A stretch of DNA of 64,000 nucleotides from Octopus bimaculoides (lineage: Eukaryota), in the NCBI RefSeq assembly GCF_001194135.2, contig NC_068992.1:59473824-59537823 (forward strand), written 5' to 3'. The translations under genes and the position numbers were made by a program. The notes below the pieces were generated by a model. It worked only from the letters and a program-made list of their open reading frames with translations, ran no database searches and was not told the origin of the DNA. Shown here piece by piece: positions 23,543-62,485 of the stretch (the first letter of the stretch is position 1; each line of letters opens with the position of its first letter).

Positions 23543-25094
23543 TCGTTCTGGTCTAACGACCCTCCATGCTTGTTTTGTTCAGTTTCCTTGTATGTCTCCA
23601 TTGTCATGTTTTTGTTCCCAACTTTGACCCTCCATAGATCCTAAATTTTATTTTAGAATTTATGGCAGCAACTGTCTTTGAAGACTCATATTGTTGGTAT
23701 TATCCATCATCATCATCATCATCATCGTTTAACGTCCGCCTTCCATGCTAGCATGGGTTGGATGATTTGACTGAGGAGTGGTGTAACCAGATGGCTACAC
23801 TAGGCTCCAATCTGATTTGGCAGAGTTTCTACAGCTGGATGCCCTTCCTAACGCCAACCACTCCGAGAGTGTAGTGGGTGCTTTTATGTGCCACCTGCAC
23901 GAAGGCCAGTCGGGCGGTACTGGCAATGGCCACGCTCAAAATGGTGTATTTTATGTGACACCTGCACAGGAGCCAGTTCGGCGGCACTGGCAACGATCTC
24001 ACTTGAATGTCTTTACACGTGCCATCCGGCACAAGTGCCAGGAAGGCAATGCTGGGCACAGGTACCATTGACGGTTTCGCTTTCGCGTGCCCCAATAGGT
24101 CTTCGCAAGCTGAGGGTCATATATATATATATATATATATAATATAAAAAATATATAAATATATGCATATATACATACATATATGTACATACCTACATAT
24201 ATATGTATATATACATGCATATATGGGTACAGGACATCAAAAAAACGTTAAACACAATGAGAAGCAAAAACATAGAAAATGAACTTTTTTTGAACAACGA
24301 AAAAAACAGAGAAACGAGACATGCAACATAAAGAATATACCCCTTCATCAGTTGTCCCTGTTTCATCTACTCCGTGTTTCAAAGGTAATATATGTATGGG
24401 CTTCTTTCAGTTTCTGTCTACCATGTCTGTTCACAAGTCTTTGGTTGACCCAAGTTTATATTAGAAGGCACTTGTTCAAGGTGTCATGCAGTGGGGCTGA
24501 AACTGGAATCATATGGTTCAGACGCAAACTGCTTACTACATATTTTTCTCAAAAATATTTTACTTGCTTATTTTCGGAATCCAGAAAATCCTATATCTCA
24601 GGATGGCGACTACCGTGTTGAAATTCTGAGCATCTTAAAGACTCTCACAGTCTTGGATGAAGAAGAATTTACAGACGAAGATCATGCAGAAGTAAGGGAC
24701 ATTGCCAAGCAGCGCCATAATTCTGAGGTACTGTGGTTCTTTTAAGCCTGTGATTGATAATATTTTCCAAACAGAATTCTTCTATTGTTATTTAGTTCAA
24801 AGATTAGTTGTCAAATGACTGGTTGATAAGGTGATGTGGTAAAGAGAGAGAGAGAGAGGGAGAGAGGGAAGGAGAGAGAGAAAGAAGAAAGAGAGATGGT
24901 GTGATGTGTCAGAGGGAGAGAGAGTAAGAGAGAAAGAGAAAGACGGAGACAGAGCCTGAGAAAGAAAGATAAACAAAAATAAATAGAGAGAGAGAAAGAG
25001 AGAAGAGATGACAAAATTTTAGAGAGACAATTGTCAGAGAGGGATATAACAAAATGTAAGAAGGATATGAGAAGCCACCAGAGAGAGAGAGAGA

Positions 25095-31957: not shown

Positions 31958-32077
31958 ATGGAAGAAGTGGAAGACCCGTGTCTCTCTGACCAAGATTTCA
32001 CAAAACAACTTGAGAAATGTGTTTGTATTTTGAAAAAAGCTGGCACCGACAACGAAAAGCTGGCTGCACTAATGATG
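31958..32077 (+). CDS. NCDN: NCDN exon 1: MEEVEDPCLSDQDFTKQLEKCVCILKKAGTDNEKLAALMM
   Basis: ATG in acaATGg context, ATG|gtttgt donor, 120 nt. Confidence 0.88.
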
Positions 32078-33979: not shown

Positions 33980-34014
<35 letters not shown>

Positions 34015-43000: not shown

Positions 43001-46000
43001 TGTGTAAATATATATATATATACTGTAGATCAGATAAACAAGCACAGGTGTGGCTGTGTGGGAAGAAGCTTACTTCCCAACCACATGGTTCCAGGTTCAG
43101 TCCCACTGTGGGATACCTTGGGCAAGCATCTTCTACTATTATCTTGGGCTGACCAAAGCCTTGTGAGTGGATTTGGTAGATGGAAACTGCAAGAAGCCCG
43201 TCGTGTATGTATATATATGTATATGTATGTGTTTGTGTGTCTGTTTGTCCCCCCAACATCGCTTGACAACCAATGCTAGTGTGTTTACATCCCCCGTAAC
43301 TTAGCGATTCGGTAAAAGAGACCGATAGAATAAGTACTAGGCTTACAAAGAATAAGTCCTGGGATTAATTTGCTCGACTAAAGGCGGTGCTCCAGCATGG
43401 CCACAGTCAAATGGCTAAAACAAATAAAAGAGTATATAAATAAAGGTTTCTTTTAGTTTCCATCTACCCAATTCACACAAAGGCTTTGTTGTCCTGGGGC
43501 TATAGTAGAAAACATTTACCCAATGTTCCAATTTGTGGGACTGAACTTGAAGCCATACTCTAATCATTGATTGGAAAATATGACTCTCCGTGGTTGCTTG
43601 ATATCCTAGAAATAACAGCCGTACATCCCGAGTATCATATACTTGTATCTCAGTTTTTAAAAAATATTTTTTGGTAAGTGTTACTAAATTATTTCCCTAT
43701 ATTTTCAGAACAGAAGCAAAGGGAATCGGTATTAATGCTAATCTCTGTGATTGTTGAGAGTTTAGGACCAGAATTTTTGCTGCCTCCAAATCTCCCTGAT
43801 GCAAAACCATTTCTTTTAGCCATAAACCTGAATTCAGTGGAAGTTGGAATGATCATTCCATTTTCTCCTTTGGGACAGGTAAATATAATTAACATTTTGA
43901 CTGTTTCTTTTCGATATAGAATGATGGGACACAGGGGCCAGTGAAGGATGAGAGTGACAGGGTGAGAGGAGTGAGGGAAATGGAAGGAAAGTAAGAGTGA
44001 AAACTGAGGAAGATGATAGAAAATGTGATGAGGACAAGGGAGCTGATAATAAAAGGGGATGGAGAGAATAGAGTAGAATGGAGAAGATGGGAAATAAGAG
44101 CCAGTGCTGAATGTTGTGAAGAGAAATGGGATGAAATGGTTGTGTCAATAAAATTGTGCATAAAGTATATAAAATGCATTAAGTAACCATATTCCAATTT
44201 CCTTCACTTTTCAATGATTAGCAGAGGAGCGACCATCTTTTGATACAGACTCAATACAGGCCAAGCTTTCAGGTTTTATGGATCAAGTTTTCAGAAATAA
44301 CCCAATAGGTTTACTATTCATGGGTCCTGCTACTTTACCATTGTGCTACTTCATTCACTTTCTTGTAACTCTGGGTATCCTCTGACACATCCTCACCATC
44401 ACTTTCTTTCTTTTCCATCTGGGGTAACTGTATATCTCTCTGCAACAAGACACCTATTCCTATCCCTCTAACCTACTTTAGCTCCTCGTTGCCTAGCATA
44501 AAGCCACCTCCCTCAATACTACACCTGTTTCAGTCAAGGAGTTCTTGTTTGGCAAGTTACTTGATATCTTCAGTAGTGCCGGTGCCACGTAAAAAGCAGC
44601 CAGTACACTCTGCAAAGTGATTGACATTAGAAAGGGGACCCAGCCACAAACCATGCCAAAGCGGATGTTAGAGCTTGATATAATAACCCTATAGTATTCA
44701 AATGATTTTGTCAAATGTAATGATTATTTATTACCTCCGCCGAGGAAGGAGGTTATGTTTTCATCGGCGTTGGTTTGTCCGTCTTTCTGCAAAATAACTC
44801 AAAAAGTTGTGAACGCTATTTGATGAAACTTGCAGGAAAAGTTGGTAACAATACAAAGAACAGATGATGAAATATGGTAGTGATCCGGGAATTTTTATGG
44901 ATTCTTGAAGGATTTTTCATTTGTTATATTTACTTTACATAAATTATTGTTATGTTCTTTGATTATCTCCCTTGAAAACACATTCATCGTTTCCACATAA
45001 CCTATGGTGGTGTTGCTGTTTCCAAAGTTTATTTTCGTTTCTCTATTAGTAATTTTATTTGCGTTGTGTGTGTATCAGTCAAGTTTTAGGTAATTGTTGT
45101 TTCTTTTTAGTTGTATGGTGAAACNNNNNNNNNNNNNNNNNNNNNNNNNNNNNNNNNNNNNNNNNNNNNNNNNNNNNNNNNNNNNNNNNNNNNNNNNNNN
45201 NNNNNNNNNNNNNNNNNNNNNNNNNNNNNNNNNNNNNNNNNNNNNNNNNNNNNNNNNNNNNNNNNNNNNNNNNNNNNNNNNNNNNNNNNNNNNNNNNNNN
45301 NNNNNNNNNNNNNNNNNNNNNNNNNNNNNNNNNNNNNNNNNNNNNNNNNNNNNNNNNNNNNNNNNNNNNNNNNNNNNNNNNNNNNNNNNNNNNNNNNNNN
45401 NNNNNNNNNNNNNNNNNNNNNNNNNNNNNNNNNNNNNNNNNNNNNNNNNNNNNNNNNNNNNNNNNNNNNNNNNNNNNNNNNNNNNNNNNNNNNNNNNNNN
45501 NNNNNNNNNNNNNNNNNNNNNNNNNNNNNNNNNNNNNNNNNNNNNNNNNNNNNNNNNNNNNNNNNNNNNNNNNNNNNNNNNNNNNNNNNNNNNNNNNNNN
45601 NNNNNNNNNNNNNNNNNNNNNNNNNNNNNNNNNNNNNNNNNNNNNNNNNNNNNNNNNNNNNNNNNNNNNNNNNNNNNNNNNNNNNNNNNNNNNNNNNNNN
45701 NNNNNNNNNNNNNNNNNNNNNNNNNNNNNNNNNNNNNNNNNNNNNNNNNNNNNNNNNNNNNNNNNNNNNNNNNNNNNNNNNNGGAACAGCCTGCTCGTGA
45801 AATTAATGTGCAAGTGGCTGAGCACTCCACAGACACGTGTACCCTTAACGTAGTTCTCGGGGAGATTCAGCGTGACACAGTGTGACAAGGCTGACCCCTT
45901 GAATTACAGGCACAACAGAAACAGGAAGTAAGAGTGAGAGAAAGTTGTGGTGAAGGAGTACAGCAGGGTTCACCACCATCCCCTGCCGGAGCCTTGTGGA

Positions 46001-46823
46001 GCTTTTAGGTGTTTTCGCTCAATAAACACTCACAACGCCCGGTCTGGGAATCGAAACCGAGATCCTATGACCGTGAGTCCGCTGCCCTAACCACTGGGCC
46101 ATCGCGCCTCCACTATTACTATTAGGGAAAAGAAAAAATGAAATCTGGAAAGAAGTGAGTGTCCTGTCATGATTATAATTATCGTCACCACCACCACTAT
46201 CATCATCACCACCACCATCTTCACCACCACTACCACCACCACCACCACCACCACCACCATCTCCATCACCACCATTACCATCTTCAGCGTCATCTTTGCA
46301 TCTACTGTTTCCATGCTGGCATGAGTTGACCAGTATGTTGGTCAACTCGTTGCATGATAGTTGTAAGCAAGTGTCACCATCATGCAAGCAGTGTCCTTCG
46401 TTTCCAAACTTCCATGAAAAATCATGTTTAGCCATGCAGAAATATTACTCTGCTTGGAAACAAGTAAGGTTGGTGACAGGAAAGGCATCCTGCCATAGAA
46501 AATCTGCCTCAATAAACTCAACCTATGCAAGCATGGAAAAGATGTTAAACTGATGATGATGATATTTTGAAGTATGTTTAATGATGTTTCTTAATTACTA
46601 TTCTAGGTTCGTGAGAAATCAAACCAGTTGTCAGCTTATTTCAGCCTTATTGAGAACACAATCAAATTTTTGGTGAGCGGTGAAGAAGGACCACCATTTG
46701 ACCCAAGCCAAATAATTCAACTCTATTCCATCCTCACAGAGACACTGAAGTGTGTGATCCTTTTCCTGCAAGAGATAACTAAATCTTTACAGTCATTCCA
46801 GGTGTGTATATAAATGATCATAT

Positions 46824-46882
<59 letters not shown>

Positions 46883-46893
46883 TATCATATACA

Positions 46894-46931
<38 letters not shown>

Positions 46932-49900
46932 AGTGAAATCGAAATCAAACCAAATTCGATGACAGGCACCTGTGCCAGTGGAGCGCTAACAGCACCATCT
47001 GAGCATGATCATTGCCAGAGCAGGTGCCTGGCTTCTGTGCCGGTGGCACGTAAAAAGCACCATTTGAGCGTGATCGTTACCAGTGTCGCCTTACTGGCAC
47101 TTGTGCTGGTGGCACGTGAAAAAACATTCAAGCGAGGTCGTTGCCAGTGCCGCTGGACTGGCTCCTGTGTAGGTGACACGTAAAGTACACCATTTGAGTG
47201 TGGCCGTTGCCAGTACCGCCTCACTGGCCCTCATGCTGGTGGCATGTAAAAGCACCTACTACACTTTCATAGTGGTTGGCGTTAGGAAGGGCATCCAGCT
47301 GTATAAACTCTGCCAGATCAGATTGGAGCCTGGTGCAGCCATCCGGTTTCACCAGTCCTTAGTCAAAGATTGGGAATAAATAAATTAGAATCCTGTCAAC
47401 TCAGCTGTCTTCGAAATTTTCTCACGTAGTTATTTATAATAAATTTACTGTTTGTGACACAGCATGATGTACGAAAACCATTATCTCCCTTGGATTATAT
47501 TTCTCTGTCTTCTGTTGTGGACGTTCAAATTTCCATTGTTCAGGAAACTGAGATTGAGCTTGATTTATATAGCAAACAGTGTATGCTGCTTATTAAGGCT
47601 AAACTACATGTCATCATCATTCTCATCGTTTTAAGATTCAAAATTCAAATCCCACTTGAAAGGAATAAGATTTCAAGACAGAAGAAATACCAGAGAATGC
47701 AATGATGCAGCTGGTTGCTGTCCCAAATAGGTGAATTCCAGGAATGCTTCCATCAATGGCTGGATAAAGAATATGGGTGCAGAATGGGATTACTTCAAAG
47801 GAGAGTAAATGCTGAATTGATATGTGTTGTAATTTTCTTGTTATTGTACCAATTCCTATACTTTTTGATCAGACTTTGTATATATGTATATATATATATA
47901 TATATATTTGACATTGCAGGCTACTGACCCTCTGCTGCAAGCTTGCATCCGATTGGTTGGTGTGTGGATGAAAGAAGATAGTGAAGCTCTCTGTGATGAA
48001 ATCCATGATCTGGTGCCAATGTTACTGACATTTAGGTAAAAATCTATTTTATCGTTGCTCTCATTTCTTACCATTGTCATCATGAATGATTGCATCTTTG
48101 TCTGCTGTTTCCTTGGTGCCCTCATCGAATATCACTAATATTTGTATATCATTTTGTTGAACCAACAATAGAGTTTCTTTGTTGTAATTTGACCTACTGG
48201 AAACAGCAGCCTAATCTCCCTTGAATCATATCCTACTGTTTTAAATAAGGGAACTGGTGTTGCCATCCGGTTTCACCAGTCCTCAGTCAAATCGTCCAAC
48301 CCATGCTAGCATGGAAAGCGGACGTTAAACGACGATGATGATGATGATGATGATGAAAAGCATTTGAGATGCAGTTATAGCTGTGTGGTTAAAACGTTTG
48401 TTTCTCAGCTGCTTGGTTTTGAGTTCAGTTCCACTGCATGGCACCTTGTGCAAACATCATCTTTAGTCCTGTGTAGACTCTGAGTGGTTTTGGTTGATGT
48501 TAACCGAAAAAAAAGCGTGTGTGTTGTGTAGTGATAAGTGTCAACACATGAAACTCTCAGACCATGAGTCACTCTTTGCTTCTACTAAATATTAATAAAT
48601 ATATACATATAGGCACAGGAGTGGCTGTGTGGTAAGTAGCTTGCTTACCAACCACATGGTTCAATATATATATATATCATCATCATCGTTTAACGTCCGC
48701 TTTCCATGCTAGCATGGGTTGGACGATTTGACTGAAGACTGGTGATCCAGATGGCTACACCAGGCTCCAATCTGATTTGGCAGAGTTTCTAAAATATATA
48801 TATATACAGAGACAGATGATACATTAGAAAAATGTAGATCTAGATATACTTCTAAAAAGACTGGGTGGTCAAATTTGGAACATCTGTAGTGATAGGTGTG
48901 CATGGATAGGATTGACCTAGGGATGAATAACAACAAAATGAGGCAATGAGAGAATTAGTTTGCTAGAAATTGCAATCAAATGCCCCTTTAAGAAAAAGAT
49001 TGGCTGGATACATTAGATAATGCAGTAGTAAATATAGAATGTCTGATAAAAAGGGCTGGAGGGATGGTTATAGTTGGAAAGTCTGTAATCATAGATCTGC
49101 TCAATGAGAACTGACCAGCCTCTAAGAATCATCATTATCTCTTTAAGAAATCGGTTGCTGTGTGGTTAAGAAACTCTCTTTGCAAGCATGTGGTTTCGAG
49201 TTCAGTCCCCCTGAATGGTAGCTTGGCCAAGTGTCTTCTACTACAGCCCTGGGATGACCAATACCTTGTGAGTGAATTTGGTTGATGGAAACTGTGTTGA
49301 AGCCTATCATGTGTATGCGTTTGTGTTTGTCCTCCTACTGTCACTGTTGGTTTGTTTATGTCTCTAACTTAGCAGTTCAAGAAAAAGATATTGATAGAAT
49401 AAGTACCACAATTTATGACATATATAGAGGTGCTGGGGTTGATTTGTTTGACTAAACTCTTCAAGGTAGTACTCCAGCATGGTCGCAGTCCAATGACTGA
49501 AGCAAGTAAAAGATGAAACATAAAAATGTAAAGAAGTAAAAATCTGAGAAGGTGAAAGGTCATCAGGAAACATCTTATTCCGTTCTATTTTCAGTAAAAA
49601 CCTCCTTTGTACGGATGAGGTCGAGAACCCTGTGGTCAGCTGTTCAGGTGTTTTGTCCCCTTTGTTTGAAGGGTTCTGTCAGCTTGCCTCCGACACCAAG
49701 GGCAGGGAACAGCTACTACAACATGAGGCCTACGTCCCAGTCGGTCAATATTTGTTACATGCTCTCAGTCAGTTTCCTGAGACAGACGCTAACATCCTGG
49801 TAAGTTCTTTTTGTCAATGTTATTTTTGAATAATAATATCCCTCCCTCTTTTCCACTCACTGTTCCTGGGAGGGTCATGAGCGAGTCCTAAGACACCTCC

Positions 49901-52900
49901 TCCATGGGGTCCCATCAGAAGCAACTATCATTATACTTTGTGGTTGGATTCCCAAACTTGACCGACTTAGACCATAGATATTATCCAATCATCTCATTCT
50001 TGGTCTACTCTTCGGTCTCCGGTCAGTTGGCTCAGCTTGAAGAATTCATCATGTAATTCTTACCTGTGACATTCTAATCACATGTCAATAGTACCGGAGC
50101 TGTGACCTTTCAATGTGGAAAAGTAGCAGCTCAACCTAGAGAGACTCACCCTGCTGAATAATATTACTCCAGAGGTCCTTTGAAGGGACCCCATTTAGGC
50201 CACTTGTATTCGTGATTGTAGCTTTTAATTTTGCACAAGGCCAGAAGTTTTGAGGGGAGGGAGCAAGTCCTTAACATCAACACCAATATTTGGCTAGTAC
50301 TTTATTTCGTCGACCTCAGAGGTCTGAAAGACAAGATTAACCTCTGGGGCTAATTTCCTTCACTAAAATGACCTCAGAGGTGAATGGCAAGATTGACCTT
50401 GGCTTAATCTATTTGACTAAAACCCTCCAAGGTGGTACTCCAGCATGGCTGTTGTCCAATGATTGAAATAAATTAAAGAATATAAATAATCTCTCAGGAG
50501 ACAGGACACAAACTCTGTGGTCCCATGATGCATGTTCAGTTTTTCTTTAAAATTTCCTGTGTTATGAACTTTTACAGCTTCCTACTTCTTTGCAAATGTC
50601 ATGACTGTCAGGCAAAACTTTCCATGGCTCACAGCATCTGCTTTCGCAGTGGGATCATTGGCCCTTGTTATGGAGGATCATCCAGATTTGGGATCATCTT
50701 TGGTAGATGTTCTTCCAAATTTGAAATGCTTGTATCACAGGTGTTGCGTTCAGCCCCACGTTGTGGTACATTGACCAAGTGTCTTCTTCAACCAAAACCT
50801 TGTGAGTAGATTTGGTAGACAGAAACTGAAAGAAGCCCATTGCATATATGTGTGCATGTACATGCACAAGCGTGTGTGTTACTGTCTCCTTGCTTAGATT
50901 TTGCATAATAGCTGTAGACAAATGTCTGCTTTCCATGCTGGCATGGGTTAGATGGTTTGACTGGAACTGGTAAGCTGGGGAGCTACATCAGGTTCAAATC
51001 TGATTTAGCAGTTTTTCTACAGCTGGATGCCCTTCCTAATGCCAACCACTCCAAGAGTGTAGTGGGTGCCTTTTATGTGCCATTATATGACACTGGGAGC
51101 CATGTCCTTCATTTTCAATTTTACCATGTAAGCATGTCTAACCATTGAGAAATATTACTGTACTTGGAAATGTGTGAGGGTTGATGGCAGGAAGGGCATC
51201 CAGTCATAGAAAATCCACTTAAGCAAATTCCATACAGCACATGTAAGTATGGAAAAGTATGACGAGGAAGACGAAGATGAAGAATAAATAGATCCAGATG
51301 TTCCTAACAGTTAAGACTTCTAAATATCCCAATATTATTGTTGTTATTTCCAGCTGTGTGTGGAGACCCTCTGTGACCTTTTGCTTCAACTCACCGAGAC
51401 AGATACATGTTTTATTGACTCAGACTCTATATATGTTAGTTTATTCAACAGAATCTCAGAAGTTCTTCACCAAATTGGTAAGTATTCAGCAAATTTCTTG
51501 TCATTCTTGTTATAGTTTTGAGAGAAAATGAAATATTAATCACCATCTTTGATGGTATGTAAGGTGCCCTTTTTTACCCTTAAAAATTTCACGCAAAATC
51601 ACCTCAAGTCTTATATGCAAAGTTAAGCTTCCCATGGGTTTTAACCTATTAGCATTTAAACTGGTTATATCCAGCCCCATATATTCCACTTCTTTTATGT
51701 TCAAACTGGCCTGATTTGATCTCTCACACCTACCCTACAATGCCATTCTAAAATATACAATCACATCATTGTAATCTTAAGATCATCATCATCATCATCA
51801 TCGTTTTGGACGATTTGACTGAGGACTGGTGAAACCAGATGGCTACACCAGGCTCCAATCTGATTTGGCAGGGTTTCTACAGCTGGATGCCCTTCCTAAC
51901 GCCAACCACTCAGAGAGTGTAGTGGGTGCTTTTACGTGTCACCCGCACGAAGGCCAGTCAGGCGGTACTGGCAACGGCCATGCTCAAAATGGTGCATTTC
52001 ATGTGCCACCCGCACGAAAAAAAAAAAAAAAAGTGTGTTTGTGTTTATCTATTTTAATTGTTATTCCTTCATGTTTCAGTTTTCAAAAGTGAATGTCTCA
52101 ATGTAGTTGCTGTGATGTCCCTTCTTGGCCTAACACTATTCAATTCACATCATATAACAAGAGGTAAGCCATCTACTTATCTAAATGCTCTAAATGCTCC
52201 AGTCATTTTAACTATTGTCCAAGTCCATGTGTAACAAAATAAAAATAAAGAAATTGGTCTTGGTCAGAATTTTTTGACGAAGGATGCTAAACTTATCAGG
52301 TGAGATGGCACAGGACCGAGATACCTCACACCTTGCTGTACTCAAGAAGACCCGTACTCTGCAGCAGAAGTGTTAAGACTGATCCCTCTGGTGGTGAAAA
52401 GCACTTGTGATGGTGCGACGTAAAAGCGCCCATGCAGTGCCACACAAAAGCACCCGTGTAGTGTCATGTAAAAGTGCCTGTGTGACGTCACATAAAGGCA
52501 CCTGTGTGGTACCATGTAAAAGCACCAGTGCAGTGTCACATAGACGTGCTTGTGGGGTGCCATGTAAAAGCACCCAGCGCATTCTTTAAAGTGGTTGGCA
52601 TTAAGAAGGGCATCCAGCCGTAGAAACCCTGCCAAATCAGAGTGGAATCTGGTGCAGCTTGCCAGTTCTAGTCAAAACCGTCCAACCCATGCCAGCATGG
52701 ACAATGAATGTTAAATGATGAAATATTCATTTGTTTGATCAACCGAATGACCCACTCATTGAATTAACATATAAATGGCTGAGTATTCCAATGATAGATA
52801 TTTTCTTCTTGGAAAAATGTTTCTTTTGTTTTGTAGAAGTGGAAGAAGTGAAACAGAAGACGTTATTAAAGTCAACAATAACGTTCCTAAGTAGGGCCCA

Positions 52901-55900
52901 CCTTTTAGACTCTCAGCGGAACCGGAAAGAAAAAGTGCTGGTCATCAACGAAGAATACCAGGTTCATTGGGATTCTGTGTCAGGTTATTGGCTGTCAACT
53001 ATGAAAGGTAATCATGACTTCCTTTTGAGAATTGTTCTGTGTTTTCTGAGTCCTTGCTGCTGTTTGTTTTGTCTACCCTCAGACTGGATGGCCATGTATC
53101 TCCTTTACAATAGCACATCTGTTTCTGTCCACATTCTCTCTCTCTCTCTCACTGGGTAACCATGTTCCTCCTTTATAGCAAGACACCTGTTTCTGCCTCT
53201 CTGTCTCTCTCGAACTTTTTTTCATCTGACAGATCACCTCCTCCAACCCCCCCCCTCTCCTCTCAAAAGGATCTTTGTCTTGCTAGTTACTTGGTGACCC
53301 TGCCAATGTTGGTACCATGAAAAAGCATCCAGTCCTCACTGTAAAGTGGTTAGTATTTGGAAGGGCATCCAGCTCCCCCAAAAAAAAAGCCATGCCAAAA
53401 TGGACACAGAAGTCTGGTGCAGGCTCCTGCCTGGTCAGCTCCTGTCAACCTGTCCAACCCATGCCAGCATTGGAAGATGGACGTTAAACGATGATGGTGG
53501 TGGTAAAATAACTAATTCTTCTGTATGTCTTGATTCAACTCCTTTGCTCTGTTGCTTCAGATAAAATTTCTATCCATCTCTTCCAGTGCTGACCAAATGT
53601 ATCCAGAATCACCCACAGCTGACCACTACAGTGTTATTACAAACTGGCTGGATCCCTCGATTGTTAAAACTACTTGTTGATGTCCAGAGTAAGTATCCTT
53701 CATTCATTTCATTTGATGCAATGTGTGTGTGTGTGTGTATGAAAATAATGAGTCCTACAAAAAGTGTTTTGTTTCATCTGGATATTTTATTAAAAGCAAT
53801 GTTTCTCAAAGTTTTCTAATACATATTAAAACATTCAGTCCTAACACAGTTCTTTCTTCAAGTGGTCTAACCATGCTCCTCTGAGCTGGTAGCCCCACGA
53901 GTTACTCTGAGTGAGTCATTGTGGTAGTATTGATATTTCACCACTTCCATGATAACCAACGTTACTTTTTATTTGAGTGTAAGTTTGAAAGCTGAGTCAA
54001 CAGAAACGAGTTATGACTGGACGAAATCTCCAGGCTGTTTAAATGTACAAATCTCTGATATCCAAGAGGTTAAAAGTGTCTGCTGAAGGGTGCCCAGGAG
54101 TCACGACCTCAAAGCATCCAGCCCCTTTAGAGTGTAAGATGTTAAGGACTGAAATGCTTGCCTGATGGGGTTTCTTCTCCGAAGACCTTCTGCTGTTCAA
54201 CTCTCTTGAGAGTTTATTACACTATATATGTGTGTGTATGTTTTTGTATATGTATTTTTTTTTTTTTTTGTGCGGGTGGCACATGAAATGCACCATTTTG
54301 AGCGTGGCCGTTGCCAGTACTGCCTGACTGGCCTTTGTGCGGGTGACACGTAAAAGCACCCACTACACTCTCTGAGTGGTTGGCATTAGGAAGGGCATCC
54401 AGCTGTAGAAACTCTGCCAAATCAGATTGGAGCCTGGTGTAGCCATCTGGTTTCACCAGTCCTCAGTCAAATCGTCCAACCCATGCTAGCATGGAAAGCG
54501 GACGTTAAACGACGACGACGACAACATACACATGTTTGTAAATATATATGTATATATATATATAATAATAAGATGAGAGTATAGAAAGGTAATTAATAAA
54601 TTATTATTTATTAATTAAAGAATTGACAAACATCCCTTACAGCAGTTTCAATTCAGGCTCTCAGAAAATTAATTAATTAAATCAAAAATTATATGAAAGT
54701 CGAATCTCTTCAGAGGTAGATAAAGGTATACACAGTAGGTGTTCAATTTCCTCATATTGAGTAAACAACTGCAAACCTATATATATATATATATATATAT
54801 ATAAGCATGTAAAAACCACTATCCAAACGTGTCCAATACCAGTGCTGCCTGACTAGCCCCCATGCTGGTGGCATGTAAAAAGCACCCACTACAATCTCAG
54901 AGTGGTTGGCGTTAGGAAGGGCATCCAGCTGTAGAAACATTGCCAGATCAGATTGGAGCCTGGTGCAGCCTCCTGGTTTGCCAGTCCCCAGCATGGAAAA
55001 CAGACATTAAATGATGATGATGGTAAGAAACTGCACTGGAATTAAAAGAAATTATACAAAACTGAGCTAACCCAAACGAAGGACTATTGAAAGTATATGC
55101 TATTATAAAAAGCAAGGATATATTATTGCTGGGAAGCGCTCCTCCGCTCACTTTTATAAATTTGCTGTGTTGCTTAGAAAGTTTTGCACACTCCTACTTG
55201 ACCTTACTTTCTCATTATTAAGAGTCCCTCCTTTCAACAAAATGCAGCACTCCTTTATTTCTTTGTTTCTCTTTCAATGTAATTTTTTCCTCCTCTGCTT
55301 CCTCTTGACTTCATTTTCTTCCTATCCTTCTCATCTTTAGTAATATTGTTGTTGTCTTCAAAAACCCATTTTGTTTTACTTTCTTTTCTCTAGAGATCAG
55401 TGTTCATGTGGATTATAGCAGTGCCTACCTGAACCTACTGTATGCCCTGATCATCACCAAGGAAGCTAGAACTGTGATAATCGATAACTGTGGAGCTGAA
55501 GTGGCCAAGTAAGTTAAACACTAACACTGTTCTCTTCATCTTCATCATCATCATCATCATCATCGTTTAACGTCCGCTTTCCATGCTAGCATGGGTTGGA
55601 CGATTTGACTGAGGACTGGTGAAACCGGATGGCAACACCAGGCTCCAGTCTGATTTGGCAGAGTTTCTACAGCTGGATGCCCTTCCTAACGCCAACCACT
55701 CAGAGAGTGTAGTGGGTGCTTTTACGTGTCTTGTTGTTATGAAATGATGGATGATAACGAATAGCCAATACTTGATAATATATTACCCATTTTTATCATG
55801 GGAACAGGCATGGCTGTGTGGTTAAGAAGTTAGCTTCTTGATCATAGGGTACTGGGTTCATCCCTATTGCATGACACCTTGGGCAAGTATCTTCTATTAT

Positions 55901-56910
55901 AGCCCTGGTCTGACCAAGGCCTTGTGAGTGGATTTGGTAGATGGAAACTGAAAGAAGCTTGTCATTTGTGGGTGTGTATGTGTCCGTCCTTGACTTGATG
56001 TGGTGTAATGTCATAAATGAATGTCATTCATTTCTGTTATTTTGTGAAAACCTGTCTGGTCATGGGGAAATATTACTTTGGCTGGAAACAGATGAGGGTT
56101 GGTGACAGGAACAGCATCCGTCCATACAAAATCTGCCTCAATGAACTCTGACCCATGCAAGCACTGAAAAGTGGACATTAAAGTGATGATGATACAACTT
56201 ATTGTGGTTCTGTGCTGGTTCAGGTATGTAATGTATAGAGATGATGATGATGACTGGGTAATAAAAAAAAGGTGTCAGGTGATCCAAATGGGAAGAATTT
56301 GTGGAAGAGGAAGACATAGGAAGATGATTAAGGTGAGGGAACTAATATTAGGAGGCTGACCCTCACAAAAACATTGACAAAGAATCCACAATAAGTTGCA
56401 AGATGCTGTAGTGGAGAAGAACTGCCCATCGCATGCAAGTGTGGAAAACAGGCATGAAGGAGGAGGAGAGGAAGAAGAAGAAGAAGAGGATGATGGTGAT
56501 AATGACCATCATCATCATCATTATCAAGGGTGGTGAGCTGGTAGAATCGTTAGCGTGCCGGCTGAAATGCTTAGCGGTATTTCGTTTGCCGTTACGTTCT
56601 GAGTTCAAATTCCGCCGAGGTTGAATTTGCCTTTCATCCTTTCGGGGTCGATAAATTAAGTACCAGTTACGCACTGGGGTCGATGTAATCGACTTAATCC
56701 CTTTGCCTGTCCTTGTTTGTCCCTTCTGTGTTTAGCCCCTTGTGGGCAATAAAAAAAAATAAAACAAATAAGAATCGTTAGCATGCTGGGTGAAATGCTT
56801 AGCGGCATTTCGTCTGTCTTTAAATTCTGAGTTCAAATTCTGCCAAGGGTAACTTTGCCTTTCATGGTTTTGGAGTCAATAAAATAAGTACCATTTAATA
56901 TTTGTGTGTG

Positions 56911-56941
<31 letters not shown>

Positions 56942-57758
56942 GCGCATACATGATGGGCTTCTTTCAGCAGTTTCCCTCTACCAAATCCACTCACAAGAAC
57001 CATGTGCTTGGGAAGCGAGCTTCTTACCACATGTACAGAATTTTATAATGGCTGTGCAGTTAAGGAGTTTGTTTTGCAACCACATGGTTTCAAGTTCAGT
57101 TCCACTGTGTGGCACCACGAACAAGTGTCTTCTTTTATAGCCCTGGGCTAACCAAAGCTTTGTGAGTGAGTTTAGTAGATAGAAACAGAAAGGAACCTGC
57201 CATATGTATGTTTGTGTGTGTGTGTATGCATTTATCACCCCACTGCTTAACACTTCTGTCGGTGTATTTATGTCACCGTGACTTAGCGGTTCAGCAAAAG
57301 AGACAGATAGAATAAGTACCAGATTTTTAAAAAATAAGTATTGCGATTGATTTGACTAAAACCCTTCAAGGTGTTGCCCCAGAATGGCCAAGTGCAGTTA
57401 CTGAAACAAATAAAAAAGTTTTTTTTTTTTGAAATTTTTATAGTATTTTTTTTTTTAGAATATATTGCTTCTAAGTATCATCATCATCATCATCATCATC
57501 ATCACTGTTTTACGTCCACTTTTCCTTCCTTGCATGAGTTAGAAGTTTATTGAAGTAGATTTTTTTATGGGCAGATGTCCTTCCTCTCGCCAGCCCCTAC
57601 TTGTTTCCACATGACTGGACATGTATGAAATTTTGAAATATAATTCTTTCATGTGTGATATTATGAAATAATCTTTGAAATGCTGAAAACATTCTTCAAT
57701 TTTCATTTGCAGGAAATTTAACCATTCTGAGTTGTGTGATGTTCTGTCTGTCACTTGA
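31958..57758 (+). CDS. NCDN: Neurochondrin (norbin), 18 exons, 712 aa; join(31958..32077,34675..34774,36215..36300,37154..37218,37993..38165,40318..40445,41043..41102,41885..41963,43709..43878,46607..46801,47920..48035,49595..49799,51354..51477,52080..52163,52837..53007,53587..53688,55394..55508,57713..57758)
   Basis: All introns are GT-AG and phases are consistent; 2139 nt from ATG to TGA. Colinear with human NCDN motifs as recalled: LKKAGTDNEKLAALMMVTK ~ LREAKNDSEQFAALLLVTK; IFDAVGF ~ LFDAIGF; SMIDSCYDCLTAV ~ SMIDDTYQCLTAV; DKFQFCDIL ~ SKFELCQLL; ACIRLVGVWMKEDSEAL ~ ASVRILGAWLAEETSSL; W-DSVSGYW ~ WADLQELW. Confidence 0.93.
34675..34774 (+). CDS. NCDN: NCDN exon 2: VTKLIKADKCNLQAQKILFDAIGFKFLVRLLRT
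   Basis: ttttag| ... G|gtaaga, 100 nt, phase 0->1. Confidence 0.92.
36215..36300 (+). CDS. NCDN: NCDN exon 3: KVPEGCNNYIYKSLSLTILSSFSGLQEV
   Basis: tttcag| ... |gtaagt, 86 nt, phase 1->0. Confidence 0.9.
37154..37218 (+). CDS. NCDN: NCDN exon 4: KEDPRMLTSVPLILDVLVSCL
   Basis: ttccag| ... |gtaagt, 65 nt, phase 0->2. Confidence 0.85.
37993..38165 (+). CDS. NCDN: NCDN exon 5: IEQTQDDNELTEGEFKSMIDSCYDCLTAVC...HATY
   Basis: cacag| ... G|gtacag, 173 nt, phase 2->1. Confidence 0.92.
38197..39100 (+). mobile_element. Internally deleted mariner element with intact ends, NCDN intron 5
   Basis: TIRs of about 30 bp (aggtggtatcaaa[a/g]agttccc[a/g]gactagtt, 2 mismatches); TA on both sides (38195-96, 39101-02); transposase pieces EQRANVKFCVRLGKSATET and SPDLTPADFQLFPKMK. 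Confidence 0.92.
40318..40445 (+). CDS. NCDN: NCDN exon 6: NHRALVIIQQIISTNGAEVWTKNMKGLQELLGYLGENFSRSK
   Basis: gtacag| ... |gtaagt, 128 nt, phase 1->0. Confidence 0.9.
41043..41102 (+). CDS. NCDN: NCDN exon 7: EVDKFQFCDILASVFTSVSK
   Basis: poly-T gcag| ... AAG|gtttgt, 60 nt, phase 0->0. Confidence 0.9.
41885..41963 (+). CDS. NCDN: NCDN exon 8: DQIPAGNFSWQKNIPQGFMDLIKSRL
   Basis: gtttag| ... G|gtttgt, 79 nt, phase 0->1. Confidence 0.85.
42187..42497. mobile_element. hAT (Charlie-type) MITE
   Basis: Termini cagtggttaccaaa / tttaggaaccacta; perfect 8-bp TSD ATATAAAT (42179-86 and 42498-505). Confidence 0.85.
43045..43435 (+). mobile_element. SINE family B, near full-length representative (over 20 full or partial copies, e.g. 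6090-6420 -, 9905-10260, 17050-17820, 31170-31400, 33790-34170 -, 39910-40230, 49150-49520, 55800-55990, 56940-57420)
   Basis: Head gctgtgtggtaagaagcttgcttcccaaccacatggttcc gggttcagtccc, internal (TG)n, tail aaggcggtgctccagcatggccgcagtcaaatgactgaaac. Confidence 0.85.
43709..43878 (+). CDS. NCDN: NCDN exon 9: QKQRESVLMLISVIVESLGPEFLLPP...SVEVGMIIPFSPLGQ
   Basis: tttcag| ... CAG|gtaaat, 170 nt, phase 1->0. Confidence 0.92.
44728..45060 (+). mobile_element. Related HINE-like element
   Basis: ttattacctccgccgaggaaggaggttatgttttc start, same architecture as 3262. Confidence 0.45.
45783..46111 (-). mobile_element. SINE family A copy (3' end lost in a gap)
   Basis: Reverse complement of the family A head and core. 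Confidence 0.85.
46340..46562 (+). mobile_element. Second RTE-tailed family F, representative (also 8780-9010, 35940-36160, 40510-40700, 56030-56190, 58250-58450 -)
   Basis: cttggaaacaggtgagggttggcgacaggaagggcatcc...agaaaatctgcctcaata...gcatggaaaag(GAT)n shared among copies. Confidence 0.7.
46607..46801 (+). CDS. NCDN: NCDN exon 10: VREKSNQLSAYFSLIENTIKFL...QSFQ
   Basis: ttctag| ... CAG|gtgtgt, 195 nt, phase 0->0. Confidence 0.92.
46945..47375 (+). mobile_element. Family D long copy
   Basis: Same subrepeats and tail as 16275-16762. Confidence 0.85.
47620..47810 (+). mobile_element. Degenerate mariner transposase C-terminal fragment
   Basis: Frameshifted LKGIRFQ..EEIPENAMMQL..EFQECFHQW..GDYFKG-like reading. 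Confidence 0.5.
47920..48035 (+). CDS. NCDN: NCDN exon 11: ATDPLLQACIRLVGVWMKEDSEALCDEIHDLVPMLLTF
   Basis: ttgcag| ... AG|gtaaaa, 116 nt, phase 0->2. Confidence 0.92.
49595..49799 (+). CDS. NCDN: NCDN exon 12: KNLLCTDEVENPVV...PLFEGFCQLASDTKGREQLLQ...ANIL
   Basis: tttcag| ... |gtaagt, 205 nt, phase 2->0. Confidence 0.9.
49870..50220 (-). mobile_element. Second fragment of the same RTE LINE family
   Basis: Shares blocks with 2480-2790 (ccatggggtcccatcagaagcaactatcatta; cctgtgacattctaatcacat; ccccatttaggccacttgtatt). Confidence 0.7.
51354..51477 (+). CDS. NCDN: NCDN exon 13: LCVETLCDLLLQLTETDTCFIDSDSIYVSLFNRISEVLHQI
   Basis: ttccag| ... G|gtaagt, 124 nt, phase 0->1. Confidence 0.9.
51645..51783. 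mobile_element. Truncated copy of piggyBac-like MITE family 1
   Basis: TTAA|cctattagcatttaaactgg..., reverse complement of the 62890-63048 half; cut by a retroelement at 51783. Confidence 0.65.
52080..52163 (+). CDS. NCDN: NCDN exon 14: FKSECLNVVAVMSLLGLTLFNSHHITR
   Basis: tttcag| ... G|gtaagc, 84 nt, phase 1->1. Confidence 0.9.
52411..52578 (+). repeat. 24-bp minisatellite, 7 units with a 48-bp higher-order dimer, inside a family D tail
   Basis: Units start at 52411, 52435, 52459, 52483, 52507, 52531 and 52555; consensus tggtgccaygtaaaagcacctgtg. Confidence 0.9.
52837..53007 (+). CDS. NCDN: NCDN exon 15: VEEVKQKTLLKSTITFLSRAHLL...HWDSVSGYWLSTMK
   Basis: ttgtag| ... G|gtaatc, 171 nt, phase 1->1. 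Confidence 0.92.
53587..53688 (+). CDS. NCDN: NCDN exon 16: LTKCIQNHPQLTTTVLLQTGWIPRLLKLLVDVQ
   Basis: ttccag| ... A|gtaagt, 102 nt, phase 1->1. Confidence 0.92.
55394..55508 (+). CDS. NCDN: NCDN exon 17: ISVHVDYSSAYLNLLYALIITKEARTVIIDNCGAEVA
   Basis: ctctag| ... AA|gtaagt, 115 nt, phase 1->2. Confidence 0.9.
56525..56760 (+). mobile_element. SINE family C, full-length representative (over 15 copies, e.g. 1245-1400 -, 1700-1865 -, 13540-13740, 18585-18900, 20160-20380, 21720-21905 -, 26545-26740 -, 36600-36960 -)
   Basis: Head ggtgagctggtagaatcgttagc...gagttcaaattccgccg (B box); core gcctttcatcctttcggggtcgataaattaagtacc. Confidence 0.85.
57713..57758 (+). CDS. NCDN: NCDN exon 18 (terminal): KFNHSELCDVLSVT*
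   Basis: tttgcag|G acceptor in phase 2, TGA 57756-57758; matches the length of the human C-terminus as recalled (HYRMAALEQCLSEP*). Confidence 0.88.
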
Positions 57759-60385: not shown

Positions 60386-60415
60386 CTATGATGGTGTTTC
60401 CTCTTTCTGTGTATT
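60386..60415 (-). CDS. LRRC23: LRRC23-B terminal coding exon: NTQKEETPS*
   Basis: ttttctctttccag|AAT acceptor in phase 0; 9 aa + TAG exactly as in copy A; downstream UTR aligns with A. Confidence 0.8.
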   Translation of the reverse strand, partial: NTQKEETPS

Positions 60416-60908
60416 CTGGAAAGAGAAAATAACATTGCTATTGAGTGAGGGAGCAGTGCATACCACAATCTACCCACCATGACTATCCATCTGATAAGGG
60501 TACACTGAACACATGCATCACAACCATATATGCATGACATGGAAATATCATATCAAGATAAACAGTGCATGACTTTACAAAGCCAAGAGGAGAGCGGAGA
60601 TTTATTCACATCTAAAACTTTTTATTAAAAGTTTTCTGCAACATATATAACAATGACCAACATATGTTTCTACTGCACCAACTTCACATTGCTCTGTACG
60701 CAATTATGCATCCTAGGCACTGCAGTTTCCTCAAGGGTCCGTCATTTATGATGGTTTCAAAGTGAATTAAATCAAACAAGTTACCTGCATTGGCATTCAG
60801 TTGAAGGTGATAGTATTACTTTTTAAATCGTATTGAATTCTGGTCTTATAATCACCTCTACTGATATTACAGTTGAATCGTGTTTTCAAAATGTTTATTC
60901 AGATTACA

Positions 60909-60942
<34 letters not shown>

Positions 60943-62413
60943 AGTCTTTGAAACGCCAGTGTTATAATGGTGGCAGCTGATGAAGGAAATGTCCTCTATG
61001 TGGCCTGTGTGTTTTCTGTACTCTGTTTACCATTTTGTCCATGTTTTTTTGCAACGTCATGTACCCAGATATGCATCTATATATACATGTAGATCAAGGT
61101 ATGTACATACATGTACATATATATGCATATACTCATATATTATTTATATATATATATATATATTGCCATGTTTCTCTGTCTTTCTTACATCATATATGTC
61201 ATCTCTTTGATACCTTGGTACCTTTCTATGTCTCTCTTTGAGACATTGTAACATTTCCTTCACCCTTTGACATCTTGCTGTGTAAAACAGTTATTGAAAA
61301 GTCTCTCACATCACAAGAACTGAGTGATGGTCAGAAAGGGAAGTGTTGGTGTTTGTAAGTCATACAAATATCGTAGAACGTACCTGAGCCTCTTGGCGCT
61401 CTTTTGAAACCTCATTAGCTTCATTTCTCTCTTCCTCCGTGACTTCAGAGTAATTCAATGTGAAAAGAGTTGTCAAGAAGCTAAGAACTTCAACGCGGAA
61501 ATCTGCTTCTTTAGTGATTGGATTATCTGGATTTAAAAATGTTAATTAAAAAAAAAAAAAAACTGTGTATCAGCATGGCCACAGTCAAATGACTGAAACA
61601 TGTAAAAATACATTAGAGTAAAGACACTCTTTGGTCACGAACGACCATGGGATTGCACCTAGGAAGTTATCCTTCAGACAAGGTTGTTTATGGAAGACCA
61701 AATGGTTGTGTTGCACATAAGCTCTCTCCTTCCATCAAACCGACATTGCTTGTACAGGTGCATGATGCACCACATGTCAGGTTTTGTTCAAGAAAACCAC
61801 ATGTCACCCGATCCAGGAATTGGACCCATGATCTCACAATCACGAGTGCAACGTCTTAGAAAGTAGGCCACATAGCCTTATACCAGTAATTATTATACTG
61901 TAGTTATTGATGCAGTTCATTACAAAGTGACCGTGACTGGCTCTCTGTCACTTACAATGACAAGGGTTCCAGTTGATCCGATTAACAGAAAAGCCTGCTT
62001 GTGAAATTAACGTGCAAGTGGCTGAGTATTCCACAGATACACACGCCCTTAACATAGTTCCCAGGTAGGTTCAGTGCGACACAGAATGTGACAAGGCTGG
62101 CCCTTTGAAATACAGGTACTATTCATTTTTGCCAGCTGAGAGAACTGGAGCAACGTGAAATAAAGTGTCTTGCTCAAGGACACAACATGTCACCAGGAAT
62201 CGAACTCATGACCTTATGATTATGAGTAAACATCCATAATCACTAAGCCACATGCCTTCACCCATTGCAAAGTACAACGACATTGTCTCTGTAAATATTG
62301 CCAATATGATTATAAGTCGTGAGATGTGAGACTTACCGGCCAGCAACAAAACAGTAAGAGCTGGTAGACAGGCGAGTTTTTCTATTTCGCAAAACTCCTC
62401 AATGACATTCTCT
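60386..62413 (-). CDS. LRRC23: LRRC23 paralog, copy B (3' three exons only; 5' exons beyond the window end); complement(join(60386..60415,61384..61526,62337..62413))
   Basis: Minus-strand exons ENVIEEFCEIEKLACLPALTVLLLA (77 nt), DNPITKEADFRVEVLSFLTTLFTLNYSEVTEEERNEANEVSKERQEAQ (143 nt) and NTQKEETPS* (30 nt). Same lengths and phases as the last three exons of copy A; 8/25 and 19/47 aa identical to A; canonical cag/gt sites; no stops or frameshifts. Confidence 0.88.
61384..61526 (-). CDS. LRRC23: LRRC23-B LRR-cap exon homologous to A 24585..24727
   Basis: aaatccag|AT acceptor, CAG|gtacgt donor, 143 nt, phase 1->0; 86/143 nt identical to A by hand count. Confidence 0.9.
61935..62263 (-). mobile_element. 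SINE with the family A core and a different tRNA-like head (same head at 25490-25640 +, 58630-58980 -)
   Basis: Core gttgatccgattaacagaaaagcctgcttgtgaaattaacgtgcaagtggc plus head aataaagtgtcttgctcaag...ggaatcgaactc. Confidence 0.75.
62337..62413 (-). CDS. LRRC23: LRRC23-B exon homologous to A 22403..22479
   Basis: ctatttcag|AGAGAAT acceptor, G|gtaagt donor, 77 nt, phase 2->1. Confidence 0.88.
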
Positions 62414-62485
62414 CTGAAATAGAGGAAGGAAAATGGACAGAATGCAAAGTGATGGCTATAAATTGCTCAATGTTTGAATATTTAA

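What the first reader, a model, noticed from the sequence alone, without database searches (positions are those of the whole stretch)
60386..62413. Hidden second LRRC23 gene: divergent paralogs bracketing NCDN in inverted orientation
Seen: three small minus-strand exons, absent from the ORF track, repeat the last three exons of the plus-strand LRRC23 with identical lengths (77/143/30) and phases. Amino-acid identity is only 32-40% and the frames are open. Layout: LRRC23-A (+), NCDN (+), LRRC23-B (-). Established: LRRC23 is a radial-spoke (RS3) component needed for sperm motility and, to my knowledge, usually single-copy. Inference: an old local duplication with inversion, retained under selection, perhaps giving sperm- vs cilia-specific spokes. 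B has LN where A and the LRR-cap consensus have LD (LNYSEV vs LDEEEF).
Basis: partly seen in the sequence, partly recalled or inferred. Interest (0 to 1): 0.7.

Follow-up and report, generated by a model that had tools for sequence, protein, structure and literature searches.

The report
Second octopus LRRC23 gene, already annotated
The three small minus-strand exons are the real 3' end of a second, intact LRRC23 (radial-spoke 3 head) gene in Octopus bimaculoides, an inverted paralogue on the far side of neurochondrin that public databases already annotate in three Octopus species, so it is genuine but not new.

Summary
Three minus-strand exons lie at 62413-62337, 61526-61384 and 60415-60386. 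They have AG/GT splice sites and the same lengths (77/143/30 nt) and phases as the last three exons of the plus-strand LRRC23 gene. Amino-acid identity to that gene is 32%, 40% and 33%.

The window is O. bimaculoides CM046612.1:59,473,824-59,537,823. Copy B is RefSeq XP_014769221.1 and copy A is XP_014769222.1, both named LRRC23. Neurochondrin lies between them. The layout A(+), NCDN(+), B(-) recurs in O. vulgaris and O. sinensis.

All seven shared coding exons have identical lengths in A and B (110/257/131/137/77/143/30). AlphaFold models of both copies match LRRC23 in solved RS3 structures best (TM about 0.9).

Both copies are intact in three species, with dN/dS near 0.5 (p about 0.01). A and B are sister groups. 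Synonymous divergence (pS 0.57 between A and B; 0.72-0.82 to the single Argonauta gene found) places the duplication inside octopods. Argonauta's gene sits in B's position, so B probably holds the ancestral position.

Division of labour between the copies (sperm versus cilia, or the two LRRC23 sites on AK9) was not tested. The gene is already known and of modest interest.

The parts
62337..62413 (-). LRRC23-B coding exon 6 of 8 (77 nt): last leucine-rich repeat
   Evidence: AG/GT splice sites and open frame. Identical to residues 184-209 of XP_014769221.1, which is P0003.
61384..61526 (-). LRRC23-B coding exon 7 (143 nt): LRR cap (Pfam LRR_9 type) and start of the C-terminal helix. Carries the LN in place of the consensus LD.
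   Evidence: Pfam LRR_9 match on the orthologue P0004.
60386..60415 (-). LRRC23-B terminal coding exon (27 nt plus TAG)
   Evidence: The exon is 36 nt in O. vulgaris.
2178..2287 (+). LRRC23-A coding exon 2 (110 nt): helix and N-terminal beta-hairpin
   Evidence: Exact spliced mapping of P0001 onto L004, which matches the window exactly over its first 30 kb (exons 7-8 confirmed directly). Exon 1 (357 nt) lies about 2.9 kb upstream of the window start.
3785..4041 (+). LRRC23-A coding exon 3 (257 nt)
10360..10490 (+). LRRC23-A coding exon 4 (131 nt)
19446..19582 (+). LRRC23-A coding exon 5 (137 nt)
22403..22479 (+). LRRC23-A coding exon 6 (77 nt)
24585..24727 (+). LRRC23-A coding exon 7 (143 nt)
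26839..26868 (+). LRRC23-A terminal coding exon (LVPNEGNPS*, 30 nt)
31958..57758 (+). Neurochondrin (NCDN) gene, 712-aa product. It lies 5.1 kb downstream of A and is convergent with B (2.6 kb between the two stop codons).
   Evidence: Called gene with PF05536 in L004 and L001. The ORF at window 37649-38281 hits Pfam Neurochondrin at 28.5 bits against a cut-off of 22.

Best explanation
The three exons are the 3' end of LRRC23-B, a complete and probably functional paralogue of LRRC23-A.

Shown:
- Both genes have the same 8-coding-exon structure.
- Both encode the LRRC23 fold: an acidic tail, a helix plus beta-hairpin, SDS22-type leucine-rich repeats, an LRR cap and a C-terminal helix.
- The two genes flank neurochondrin in inverted orientation in three Octopus species.
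- Both evolve fast but under purifying selection.

Inferred:
- One local inverted duplication occurred in the octopod lineage, after the split from the Argonauta lineage and 5-6 times deeper in synonymous divergence than the O. bimaculoides / O. vulgaris split.
- B kept the ancestral position, tail-to-tail with NCDN. A is the derived copy upstream of NCDN and later gained a disordered acidic N-terminal extension of about 90 residues.

Inferred from mammalian and Tetrahymena work: both proteins are head subunits of radial spoke 3 (RS3) and bind adenylate kinase AK9. The paralogues have probably divided that role. My first choice is division by cell type (sperm flagellum versus epithelial cilia). 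My second choice is division between the two non-equivalent LRRC23 sites per RS3 head.
For: - Identity: P0003 (XP_014769221.1, 'LRRC23 [O. bimaculoides]') ends with exactly the B peptide. The window maps exactly to CM046612.1.
- Exon lengths: A is 357/110/257/131/137/77/143/30. B in O. vulgaris is 81/110/257/131/137/77/143/36, and the last exon is 30 nt in O. bimaculoides.
- Family: the best PDB sequence hits are LRRC23 (B tail E = 2.4e-8; A E = 9e-50). The AF2 models have pLDDT 89.8 (B) and 79.0 (A, whose first ~120 residues are disordered). Their best Foldseek matches are LRRC23 in mouse RS3 (9d2f) and bovine sperm (9fqr), with target-normalised TM 0.90-0.92.
- Phylogeny: A and B group together in 100/100 bootstraps; the octopod clade including Argonauta is found in 200/200; A and B are sisters within it in 161/200.
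- Synonymous divergence: pS is 0.57 between A and B, 0.72-0.82 between Argonauta and either copy, and 0.15-0.18 between species. GC3 is similar in all.
- Selection: omega is 0.52 for B and 0.54 for A, below 1 at p = 0.011 and 0.009. The frames and splice sites of the annotated models are intact in all three species for both copies, apart from the N-terminally truncated O. bimaculoides B model caused by an assembly gap (models for O. sinensis B and O. vulgaris A, not remapped exon by exon).
- Synteny: the Octopus layout is conserved. The only Argonauta hians LRRC23 gene found is convergent with NCDN, like B. Gigantopelta LRRC23 has a different neighbour.
- Function context: the mouse RS3 head holds two LRRC23 molecules, each plugging an AK9 catalytic domain (bioRxiv 10.1101/2025.05.19.654877). 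LRRC23 is needed for the RS3 head and for sperm motility (PMC10721216).
Against: - No expression data could be examined, so transcription of B rests on the existence of RefSeq and ENA gene models.
- Omega near 0.5 is high for an axonemal structural protein.
- Both copies are only 36-42% identical to any non-octopod LRRC23. A keeps 57 and B keeps 67 of 101 positions that are at least 85% conserved elsewhere. RS3 and AK9 binding is therefore assumed, not shown.
- Timing relative to Argonauta is not settled. Shared derived residues slightly favour B plus Argonauta (5, against 3 for A plus B and 2 for A plus Argonauta). Bootstrap support for A plus B is only 80%. I could not inspect the DNA upstream of the Argonauta NCDN gene.
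- No squid, cuttlefish or Nautilus sequences were available.
Confidence: 0.85

Rival explanations
1. The duplication is older than the Octopus/Argonauta split, possibly coleoid-wide. B and the Argonauta gene would then be true orthologues. Argonauta either lost A or has an A copy that was not found. Gene conversion between A and B later lowered their synonymous distance.
For: The Argonauta gene occupies B's position and orientation. It shares with B the derived N at the cap LD position and the ELTNIS motif. Derived-state counts are 5 for B plus Argonauta, 3 for A plus B and 2 for A plus Argonauta. Argonauta matches B alone at 39 sites and A alone at 27. Per-exon dS between A and B is uneven, from 0.5 to 2.0.
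Against: pS between A and B (0.57) is 4-6 standard errors below pS between Argonauta and A or B (0.72-0.82), with similar GC3. Neighbour-joining supports A plus B in 161/200 replicates against 32/200 for B plus Argonauta. No second Argonauta-like protein appears among the best 150 representatives in a library of 1.84 billion.
Confidence: 0.2
2. B is a decaying or silent pseudogene copy whose terminal exons happen to remain open.
For: Omega of 0.52 shows relaxed constraint. The O. bimaculoides RefSeq model is N-terminally truncated (265 aa). No expression data were seen here.
Against: The truncation is caused by an assembly gap (L001 8736-9941) that cuts the 110-nt exon. O. vulgaris and O. sinensis have full 323-aa models with canonical splice sites. 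All internal exon lengths are preserved after dS of about 1.1. Omega is significantly below 1 and equals that of copy A. B keeps more family-conserved residues than A does (67 against 57 of 101).
Confidence: 0.04
3. B belongs to another family of cap-bearing LRR proteins (LRGUK, LRRC51, U2A', SDS22) and only resembles LRRC23 at its C-terminus.
For: With the 82-aa tail alone, the margin over LRRC51 (3e-6) and U2A' (7e-6) is modest.
Against: Full-length B groups with A inside the LRRC23 clade. It shares the 131/137/77 exon core with gastropod LRRC23. Its model matches LRRC23 chains at target-normalised TM 0.91-0.92, against 0.49 for LRGUK and about 0.8 for SDS22 at only 23% identity.
Confidence: 0.01
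4. The second copy is an assembly artefact, either a haplotig or a misjoined inverted duplicate.
For: The window is a gapped draft with 11 runs of N.
Against: A and B are only 49% identical in protein. The same arrangement is present in three independently assembled Octopus genomes.
Confidence: 0.005

Closest known systems
Mammalian LRRC23 (RS3 head subunit; PDB 9d2f chains B/C from mouse respiratory cilia, 9fqr chain Xm from bovine sperm)
   Same: Same fold and domain order: acidic tail, helix plus beta-hairpin, SDS22-type LRRs, LRR cap and C-terminal helix. Target-normalised TM is 0.90-0.92 at 38-41% identity. It is the best sequence match for both A and B.
   Different: The mammalian gene is discussed as one gene whose product fills both LRRC23 sites on AK9. 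Octopus has two genes that are 49% identical to each other. Both are unusually divergent, with changes at many otherwise conserved positions. Axonemal location was not tested for the octopus proteins.
Tetrahymena Lrrc23A / Lrrc23B (PMC12399478)
   Same: This is a precedent for two LRRC23 paralogues in one organism. Both were proposed as RS3 head components, with acidic tails of different length.
   Different: It is an independent duplication in a ciliate. There the acidic enrichment is C-terminal; in octopus copy A it is N-terminal. No genomic linkage or inversion is reported in the passages I read.
Other molluscan LRRC23 (e.g. Gigantopelta aegis XP protein P0023)
   Same: Same 8-coding-exon plan, with invariant 131/137/77-nt exons.
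   Different: Only one gene was recovered per non-octopod mollusc in these searches, which were not designed to count copies. That gene is far better conserved (abalone versus amphioxus 68% identity). It is not next to NCDN. Exon lengths differ at 113/254/155/51 nt.
Argonauta hians GAB1606088.1 (P0100)
   Same: An octopod LRRC23 in B's position, convergent with NCDN. It shares LN at the cap.
   Different: It is the only Argonauta copy found. It is 41% identical to B and 37% to A. Exons 2, 7 and 8 are 104/128/27 nt, against 110/143/30.

Membership tests
LRRC23 (radial spoke 3 head protein) | Closer in sequence to LRRC23 than to any other LRR family, and placed inside the LRRC23 clade | tested here: met
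   PDB phmmer gives LRRC23 as the top hit for both the B tail and A. The profile search returns LRRC23 orthologues across Metazoa. In the neighbour-joining tree A and B sit inside LRRC23 with 100/100 support for their monophyly.
LRRC23 (radial spoke 3 head protein) | Architecture: acidic N-tail, helix plus beta-hairpin, SDS22-type LRR solenoid, LRR cap, C-terminal helix, about 320-360 aa | tested here: met
   The AF2 model of B (pLDDT 89.8) has hairpin strands at 42-45 and 56-60, the cap, and a helix at 295-318. A is the same apart from a disordered extension of about 120 aa. The best Foldseek hits are 9d2f_B and 9fqr_Xm at TM 0.90-0.92.
LRRC23 (radial spoke 3 head protein) | Conserved gene structure: 8 coding exons with a 131/137/77-nt core in molluscs | tested here: met
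   covering Octopus A and B, Argonauta and Gigantopelta.
LRRC23 (radial spoke 3 head protein) | Retention of family-conserved residues | tested here: inconclusive
   Of 101 columns at least 85% conserved in 60 other LRRC23 proteins, B keeps 67 and A keeps 57. Many of the changes are shared by both copies.
LRRC23 (radial spoke 3 head protein) | Location in the RS3 head, binding of AK9 and RSPH9, requirement for flagellar motility | not testable with these tools
   Known only for mouse, human, bovine and Tetrahymena.
LRRC23 (radial spoke 3 head protein) | Expression in testis or ciliated tissues | not tested
   No cephalopod RNA-seq was accessible. No paper in the library pairs LRRC23 with the word octopus, and none of the listed top results of a broader cephalopod search held the LRRC23 phrase.
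Processed or decaying pseudogene | Frame disruptions, lost splice sites, or dN/dS about 1 | tested here: not met
   Introns are retained. Frames and GT/AG sites are intact in O. bimaculoides and O. vulgaris, and a full-length model exists in O. sinensis. Omega is 0.52 with p = 0.011.
LRGUK / LRRC51 / U2A' / SDS22 (other cap-bearing LRR proteins) | Best match, extra domains (guanylate kinase in LRGUK), or a different length class | tested here: not met
   All score lower than LRRC23. B has no further Pfam domain beyond LRR_1/4/8/9.

The most novel reading that the evidence does not exclude
After the duplication, the two octopus LRRC23 proteins became non-interchangeable. Either each fills one of the two structurally distinct LRRC23 sites that plug AK9 catalytic domains in every RS3 head, or A (with its long acidic tail) and B build different RS3 heads in sperm flagella and in epithelial cilia. 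Either case would be a natural genetic separation of two roles that one gene performs in mammals.
Probability: 0.3. Interest if true: 0.5.

Novelty: already known. Interest (0 to 1): 0.22.

Why it matters
As a gene discovery it does not matter: both copies are already in RefSeq, UniProt and ENA for three Octopus species.

The evolutionary details worked out here are a small addition. They are the octopod-internal inverted duplication across NCDN, the likely ancestral position of B, and the fast, symmetrical divergence of both copies.

They could be useful to people studying radial spoke 3. In mouse, the RS3 head holds two LRRC23 molecules in different environments, each proposed to gate an AK9 adenylate-kinase domain. 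An animal with two diverged LRRC23 genes offers a way to ask whether those two positions, or sperm and ciliary spokes, have different requirements.

There is also a practical point. The RefSeq model XP_014769221.1 is truncated at its N-terminus by an assembly gap.

Tried and rejected
- Searching the 5.8-billion-protein index with the 82-aa B peptide alone found nothing. This was a word-index artefact, because the annotated protein P0003 contains the peptide exactly.
- I looked for a further B exon inside 62414-64000. There is no LRR-like open frame there. The next exon lies 364 nt beyond the window end.
- I looked for a third copy or stray LRRC23 fragments in the window and in all fetched flanks. 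None was found.
- I tested for gene conversion between A and B using per-exon dS. The values are uneven (0.5-2.0), but the exons are too short to conclude anything.
- I tried to settle A plus B against B plus Argonauta with derived-residue counts. The result (5, 3, 2) is not decisive. Exon-length characters are equally parsimonious on both trees.
- The Haliotis synteny look-up failed because the protein is not on record.
- P0005, P0006 and P0011-13 scored highest against the profile only because two of them were in the query alignment. They do not group with octopods and their source organisms are unknown.
- Literature searches pairing LRRC23 with octopus or cephalopod terms found no relevant paper.
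- I considered and rejected compositional bias as the cause of the lower pS between A and B. GC3 is 0.40-0.47 in all the sequences.

Full report
**Observation.**
- The exons are 62413-62337 (77 nt), 61526-61384 (143 nt) and 60415-60386 (30 nt, ending in TAG).
- Each is preceded by a polypyrimidine tract and AG. The two internal exons are followed by GTAAGT and GTACGT.
- Only one frame is open across the joined 250 nt.
- It encodes a last leucine-rich repeat, an LRR cap and a short charged tail.
- The plus-strand counterparts are 22403-22479, 24585-24727 and 26839-26868, with the same lengths and phases.
- Amino-acid identity is 8/25, 19/47 and 3/9.
- Within the window, tblastn links the two 143-nt exons at E = 4e-10. 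Apart from B's own exons, nothing else scores below E about 2.6.
- No ORF of 90 aa or more covers these exons.

**What the locus is.** A search with the translated copy-A exons returned two O. bimaculoides proteins on the same 68.46-Mb chromosome, both named LRRC23 by NCBI.
- P0001 (413 aa, XP_014769222.1) is 100% identical to copy A.
- P0003 (265 aa, XP_014769221.1; UniProt A0A0L8HUT1) ends with exactly the copy-B peptide.
- Orthologues of both are annotated in O. sinensis (A: XP_029643750.1; B: XP_029643796.1 and XP_036363883.1) and in O. vulgaris (A: CAI9731312.1; B: CAI9731314.1).
- Fetching the encoding contigs shows that the window is CM046612.1:59,473,824-59,537,823. I verified this base for base.
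- Between the two genes lies a 712-aa Neurochondrin gene on the plus strand, at about window 31958-57758.
- The layout A(+), NCDN(+), B(-) recurs in O. vulgaris and O. sinensis.

**Gene structure.** Exact spliced mapping gave these coding-exon lengths.

| Gene | Exon lengths (nt) |
|---|---|
| A, O. bimaculoides | 357/110/257/131/137/77/143/30 |
| A, O. sinensis | 402/110/257/131/137/77/143/30 |
| B, O. vulgaris | 81/110/257/131/137/77/143/36 |
| B, O. bimaculoides | .../257/131/137/77/143/30 |

The 137-nt exon would lie at window-equivalent 64364-64500, the 131-nt exon at 69324-69454 and the 257-nt exon at 71254-71510.
- The 110-nt exon begins near 73857 and runs into a 1.2-kb assembly gap. 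That gap explains the truncated 265-aa RefSeq model.
- The gastropod Gigantopelta has 156/113/254/131/137/77/155/51. Argonauta hians has 141/104/257/131/137/77/128/27.
- The 8-exon plan is therefore ancestral for the molluscs sampled. The exact 110/143/30 lengths are specific to Octopus A and B.

**Family membership.**
- The B tail alone hits LRRC23 best in the PDB (E = 2.4e-8), ahead of LRRC51 and U2A'. Copy A hits LRRC23 at E = 9e-50.
- AlphaFold models built from a 64-sequence alignment are confident. B has pLDDT 89.8 and pTM 0.84. A has pLDDT 79.0, with its first ~120 residues disordered.
- Both show the same order of elements: helix, beta-hairpin, LRR solenoid, cap and long C-terminal helix.
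- Their best Foldseek matches are the LRRC23 chains of mouse RS3 (9d2f) and bovine sperm doublets (9fqr), with target-normalised TM 0.90-0.92 at 38-41% identity. LRGUK and SDS22 rank lower.

**Evolution.**
- In neighbour-joining trees of 71 LRRC23 proteins, the A and B orthologue pairs are sister groups in 100/100 bootstraps.
- Both are unusually divergent: 36-42% identical to any non-octopod LRRC23, whereas abalone and amphioxus share 68%.
- The divergence is symmetrical. Tajima relative-rate tests give p = 0.27-0.90.
- Of 101 positions at least 85% conserved elsewhere, A keeps 57 and B keeps 67, and many losses are shared.
- Between species, omega is 0.52 for B and 0.54 for A. Both are below 1 at p about 0.01.
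- The last three exons are the fastest-evolving part of both genes.

**Timing of the duplication.**
- An exhaustive search of 1.84 billion representatives found one further close relative, Argonauta hians GAB1606088.1.
- Its gene is convergent with NCDN, exactly like B.
- The octopod clade has 200/200 support. A plus B is found in 161/200 replicates and B plus Argonauta in 32/200.
- Derived-residue counts are indecisive at 5 (B plus Argonauta), 3 (A plus B) and 2 (A plus Argonauta).
- Synonymous sites are clearer. pS is 0.57 between A and B (dS about 1.1). It is 0.72-0.82 between Argonauta and either copy, which is saturated. It is 0.15-0.18 between Octopus species. GC3 is similar throughout.
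- The most likely history is a single inverted duplication inside octopods after the Argonauta lineage split off. B keeps the ancestral position and A is the new copy upstream of NCDN.
- An older duplication with later conversion or loss remains possible; I give it about 0.2.
- In Gigantopelta, LRRC23 is not next to NCDN.

**Function.**
- LRRC23 is an RS3 head subunit. Loss of its C-terminal part abolishes flagellar localisation and the RS3 head and causes male infertility (PMC10721216).
- In the mouse RS3 structure the head contains two LRRC23 molecules. Each inserts an N-terminal beta-hairpin into a different AK9 catalytic domain (bioRxiv 10.1101/2025.05.19.654877).
- Tetrahymena has two paralogues, Lrrc23A and Lrrc23B, both proposed as RS3 head parts (PMC12399478).
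- By inference, octopus A and B are both RS3 head proteins.
- They differ most in the N-terminal acidic tail and in the cap and C-terminal exons. The tail has 123-138 residues with 47-53 acidic ones in A, against 31 residues with 17 acidic ones in B.
- Whether they are split by tissue or by site within one spoke cannot be decided without expression or proteomic data. I lean to a tissue split at about 0.4, against about 0.25 for a site split.

**Novelty.** The gene is real but not hidden: it is annotated under the LRRC23 name in three species. No paper in the library pairs LRRC23 with the word octopus, and none of the listed top results of a broader cephalopod search held the LRRC23 phrase. The evolutionary description is therefore a minor new note on a known gene. 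Nothing here required a referred step.

Noticed in passing
Beyond the window: L001 8669-9941, equivalent to window positions about 72585-73857: The 110-nt exon of LRRC23-B runs into a 1.2-kb run of N in the O. bimaculoides assembly. This is why RefSeq XP_014769221.1 (265 aa) and UniProt A0A0L8HUT1 (272 aa) have artificial N-termini, compared with the 323-aa O. vulgaris and O. sinensis proteins.
   Followed up: yes
Whole LRRC23 clade; P0001-P0004 and P0100: All octopod LRRC23 proteins (A, B and the Argonauta gene) are only 34-42% identical to other animals' LRRC23. Abalone and amphioxus share 68%. Seven conserved positions changed in all octopod sequences, so an RS3 head protein accelerated along the whole lineage and not only after the duplication.
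   Followed up: partly
Just upstream of the window start (L004 10001-10357) and L003 10001-10402: Exon 1 of copy A encodes a 119-134-aa Glu/Lys-rich, repeat-like extension that is predicted to be disordered. It differs by 45 nt between O. bimaculoides and O. sinensis and by a further 7 residues in O. vulgaris. B, Argonauta and other molluscs have short acidic tails.
   Followed up: partly
window 39819-39892 (+): A tRNA-like sequence sits inside an NCDN intron. It scores 36.6 bits against Rfam tRNA (cut-off 29), and ARAGORN calls it tRNA-Thr (GGT). ARAGORN alone calls a second one at 42559-42649. Either a tRNA gene or a tRNA-derived SINE head is possible.
   Followed up: no
window 25563-25596 (+), 58861-58894 (-), 62144-62177 (-): A dispersed SINE-like repeat has a 34-mer core present three times, against zero expected by chance. 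One copy is in the last intron of A and one is in the intron between B's 77- and 143-nt exons.
   Followed up: partly
window 38346-38792 (+), 29851-30180 (-), 6530-7078 (+): ORFs that look like mariner/Mos1 transposase remnants lie in an NCDN intron (38346-38792), the A-NCDN intergenic spacer (29851-30180) and an intron of A (6530-7078). Only the first has a Pfam hit (HTH_48, 21.2 bits, below the 24.1 cut-off). The other two resemble mariner only from memory.
   Followed up: partly
window 4516-5211, 11824-12625, 32759-33557, 45125-45782 and seven more: Eleven runs of N (10-802 nt) and many microsatellites and low-complexity tracts, for example (GA)n at about 24850-25140. The window is gapped draft sequence, so intron lengths are approximate.
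   Followed up: no
P0014 and P0108 (Branchiostoma floridae): Amphioxus also has at least two distinct LRRC23-like proteins, on contigs of different size. LRRC23 is therefore not strictly single-copy outside octopods.
   Followed up: no
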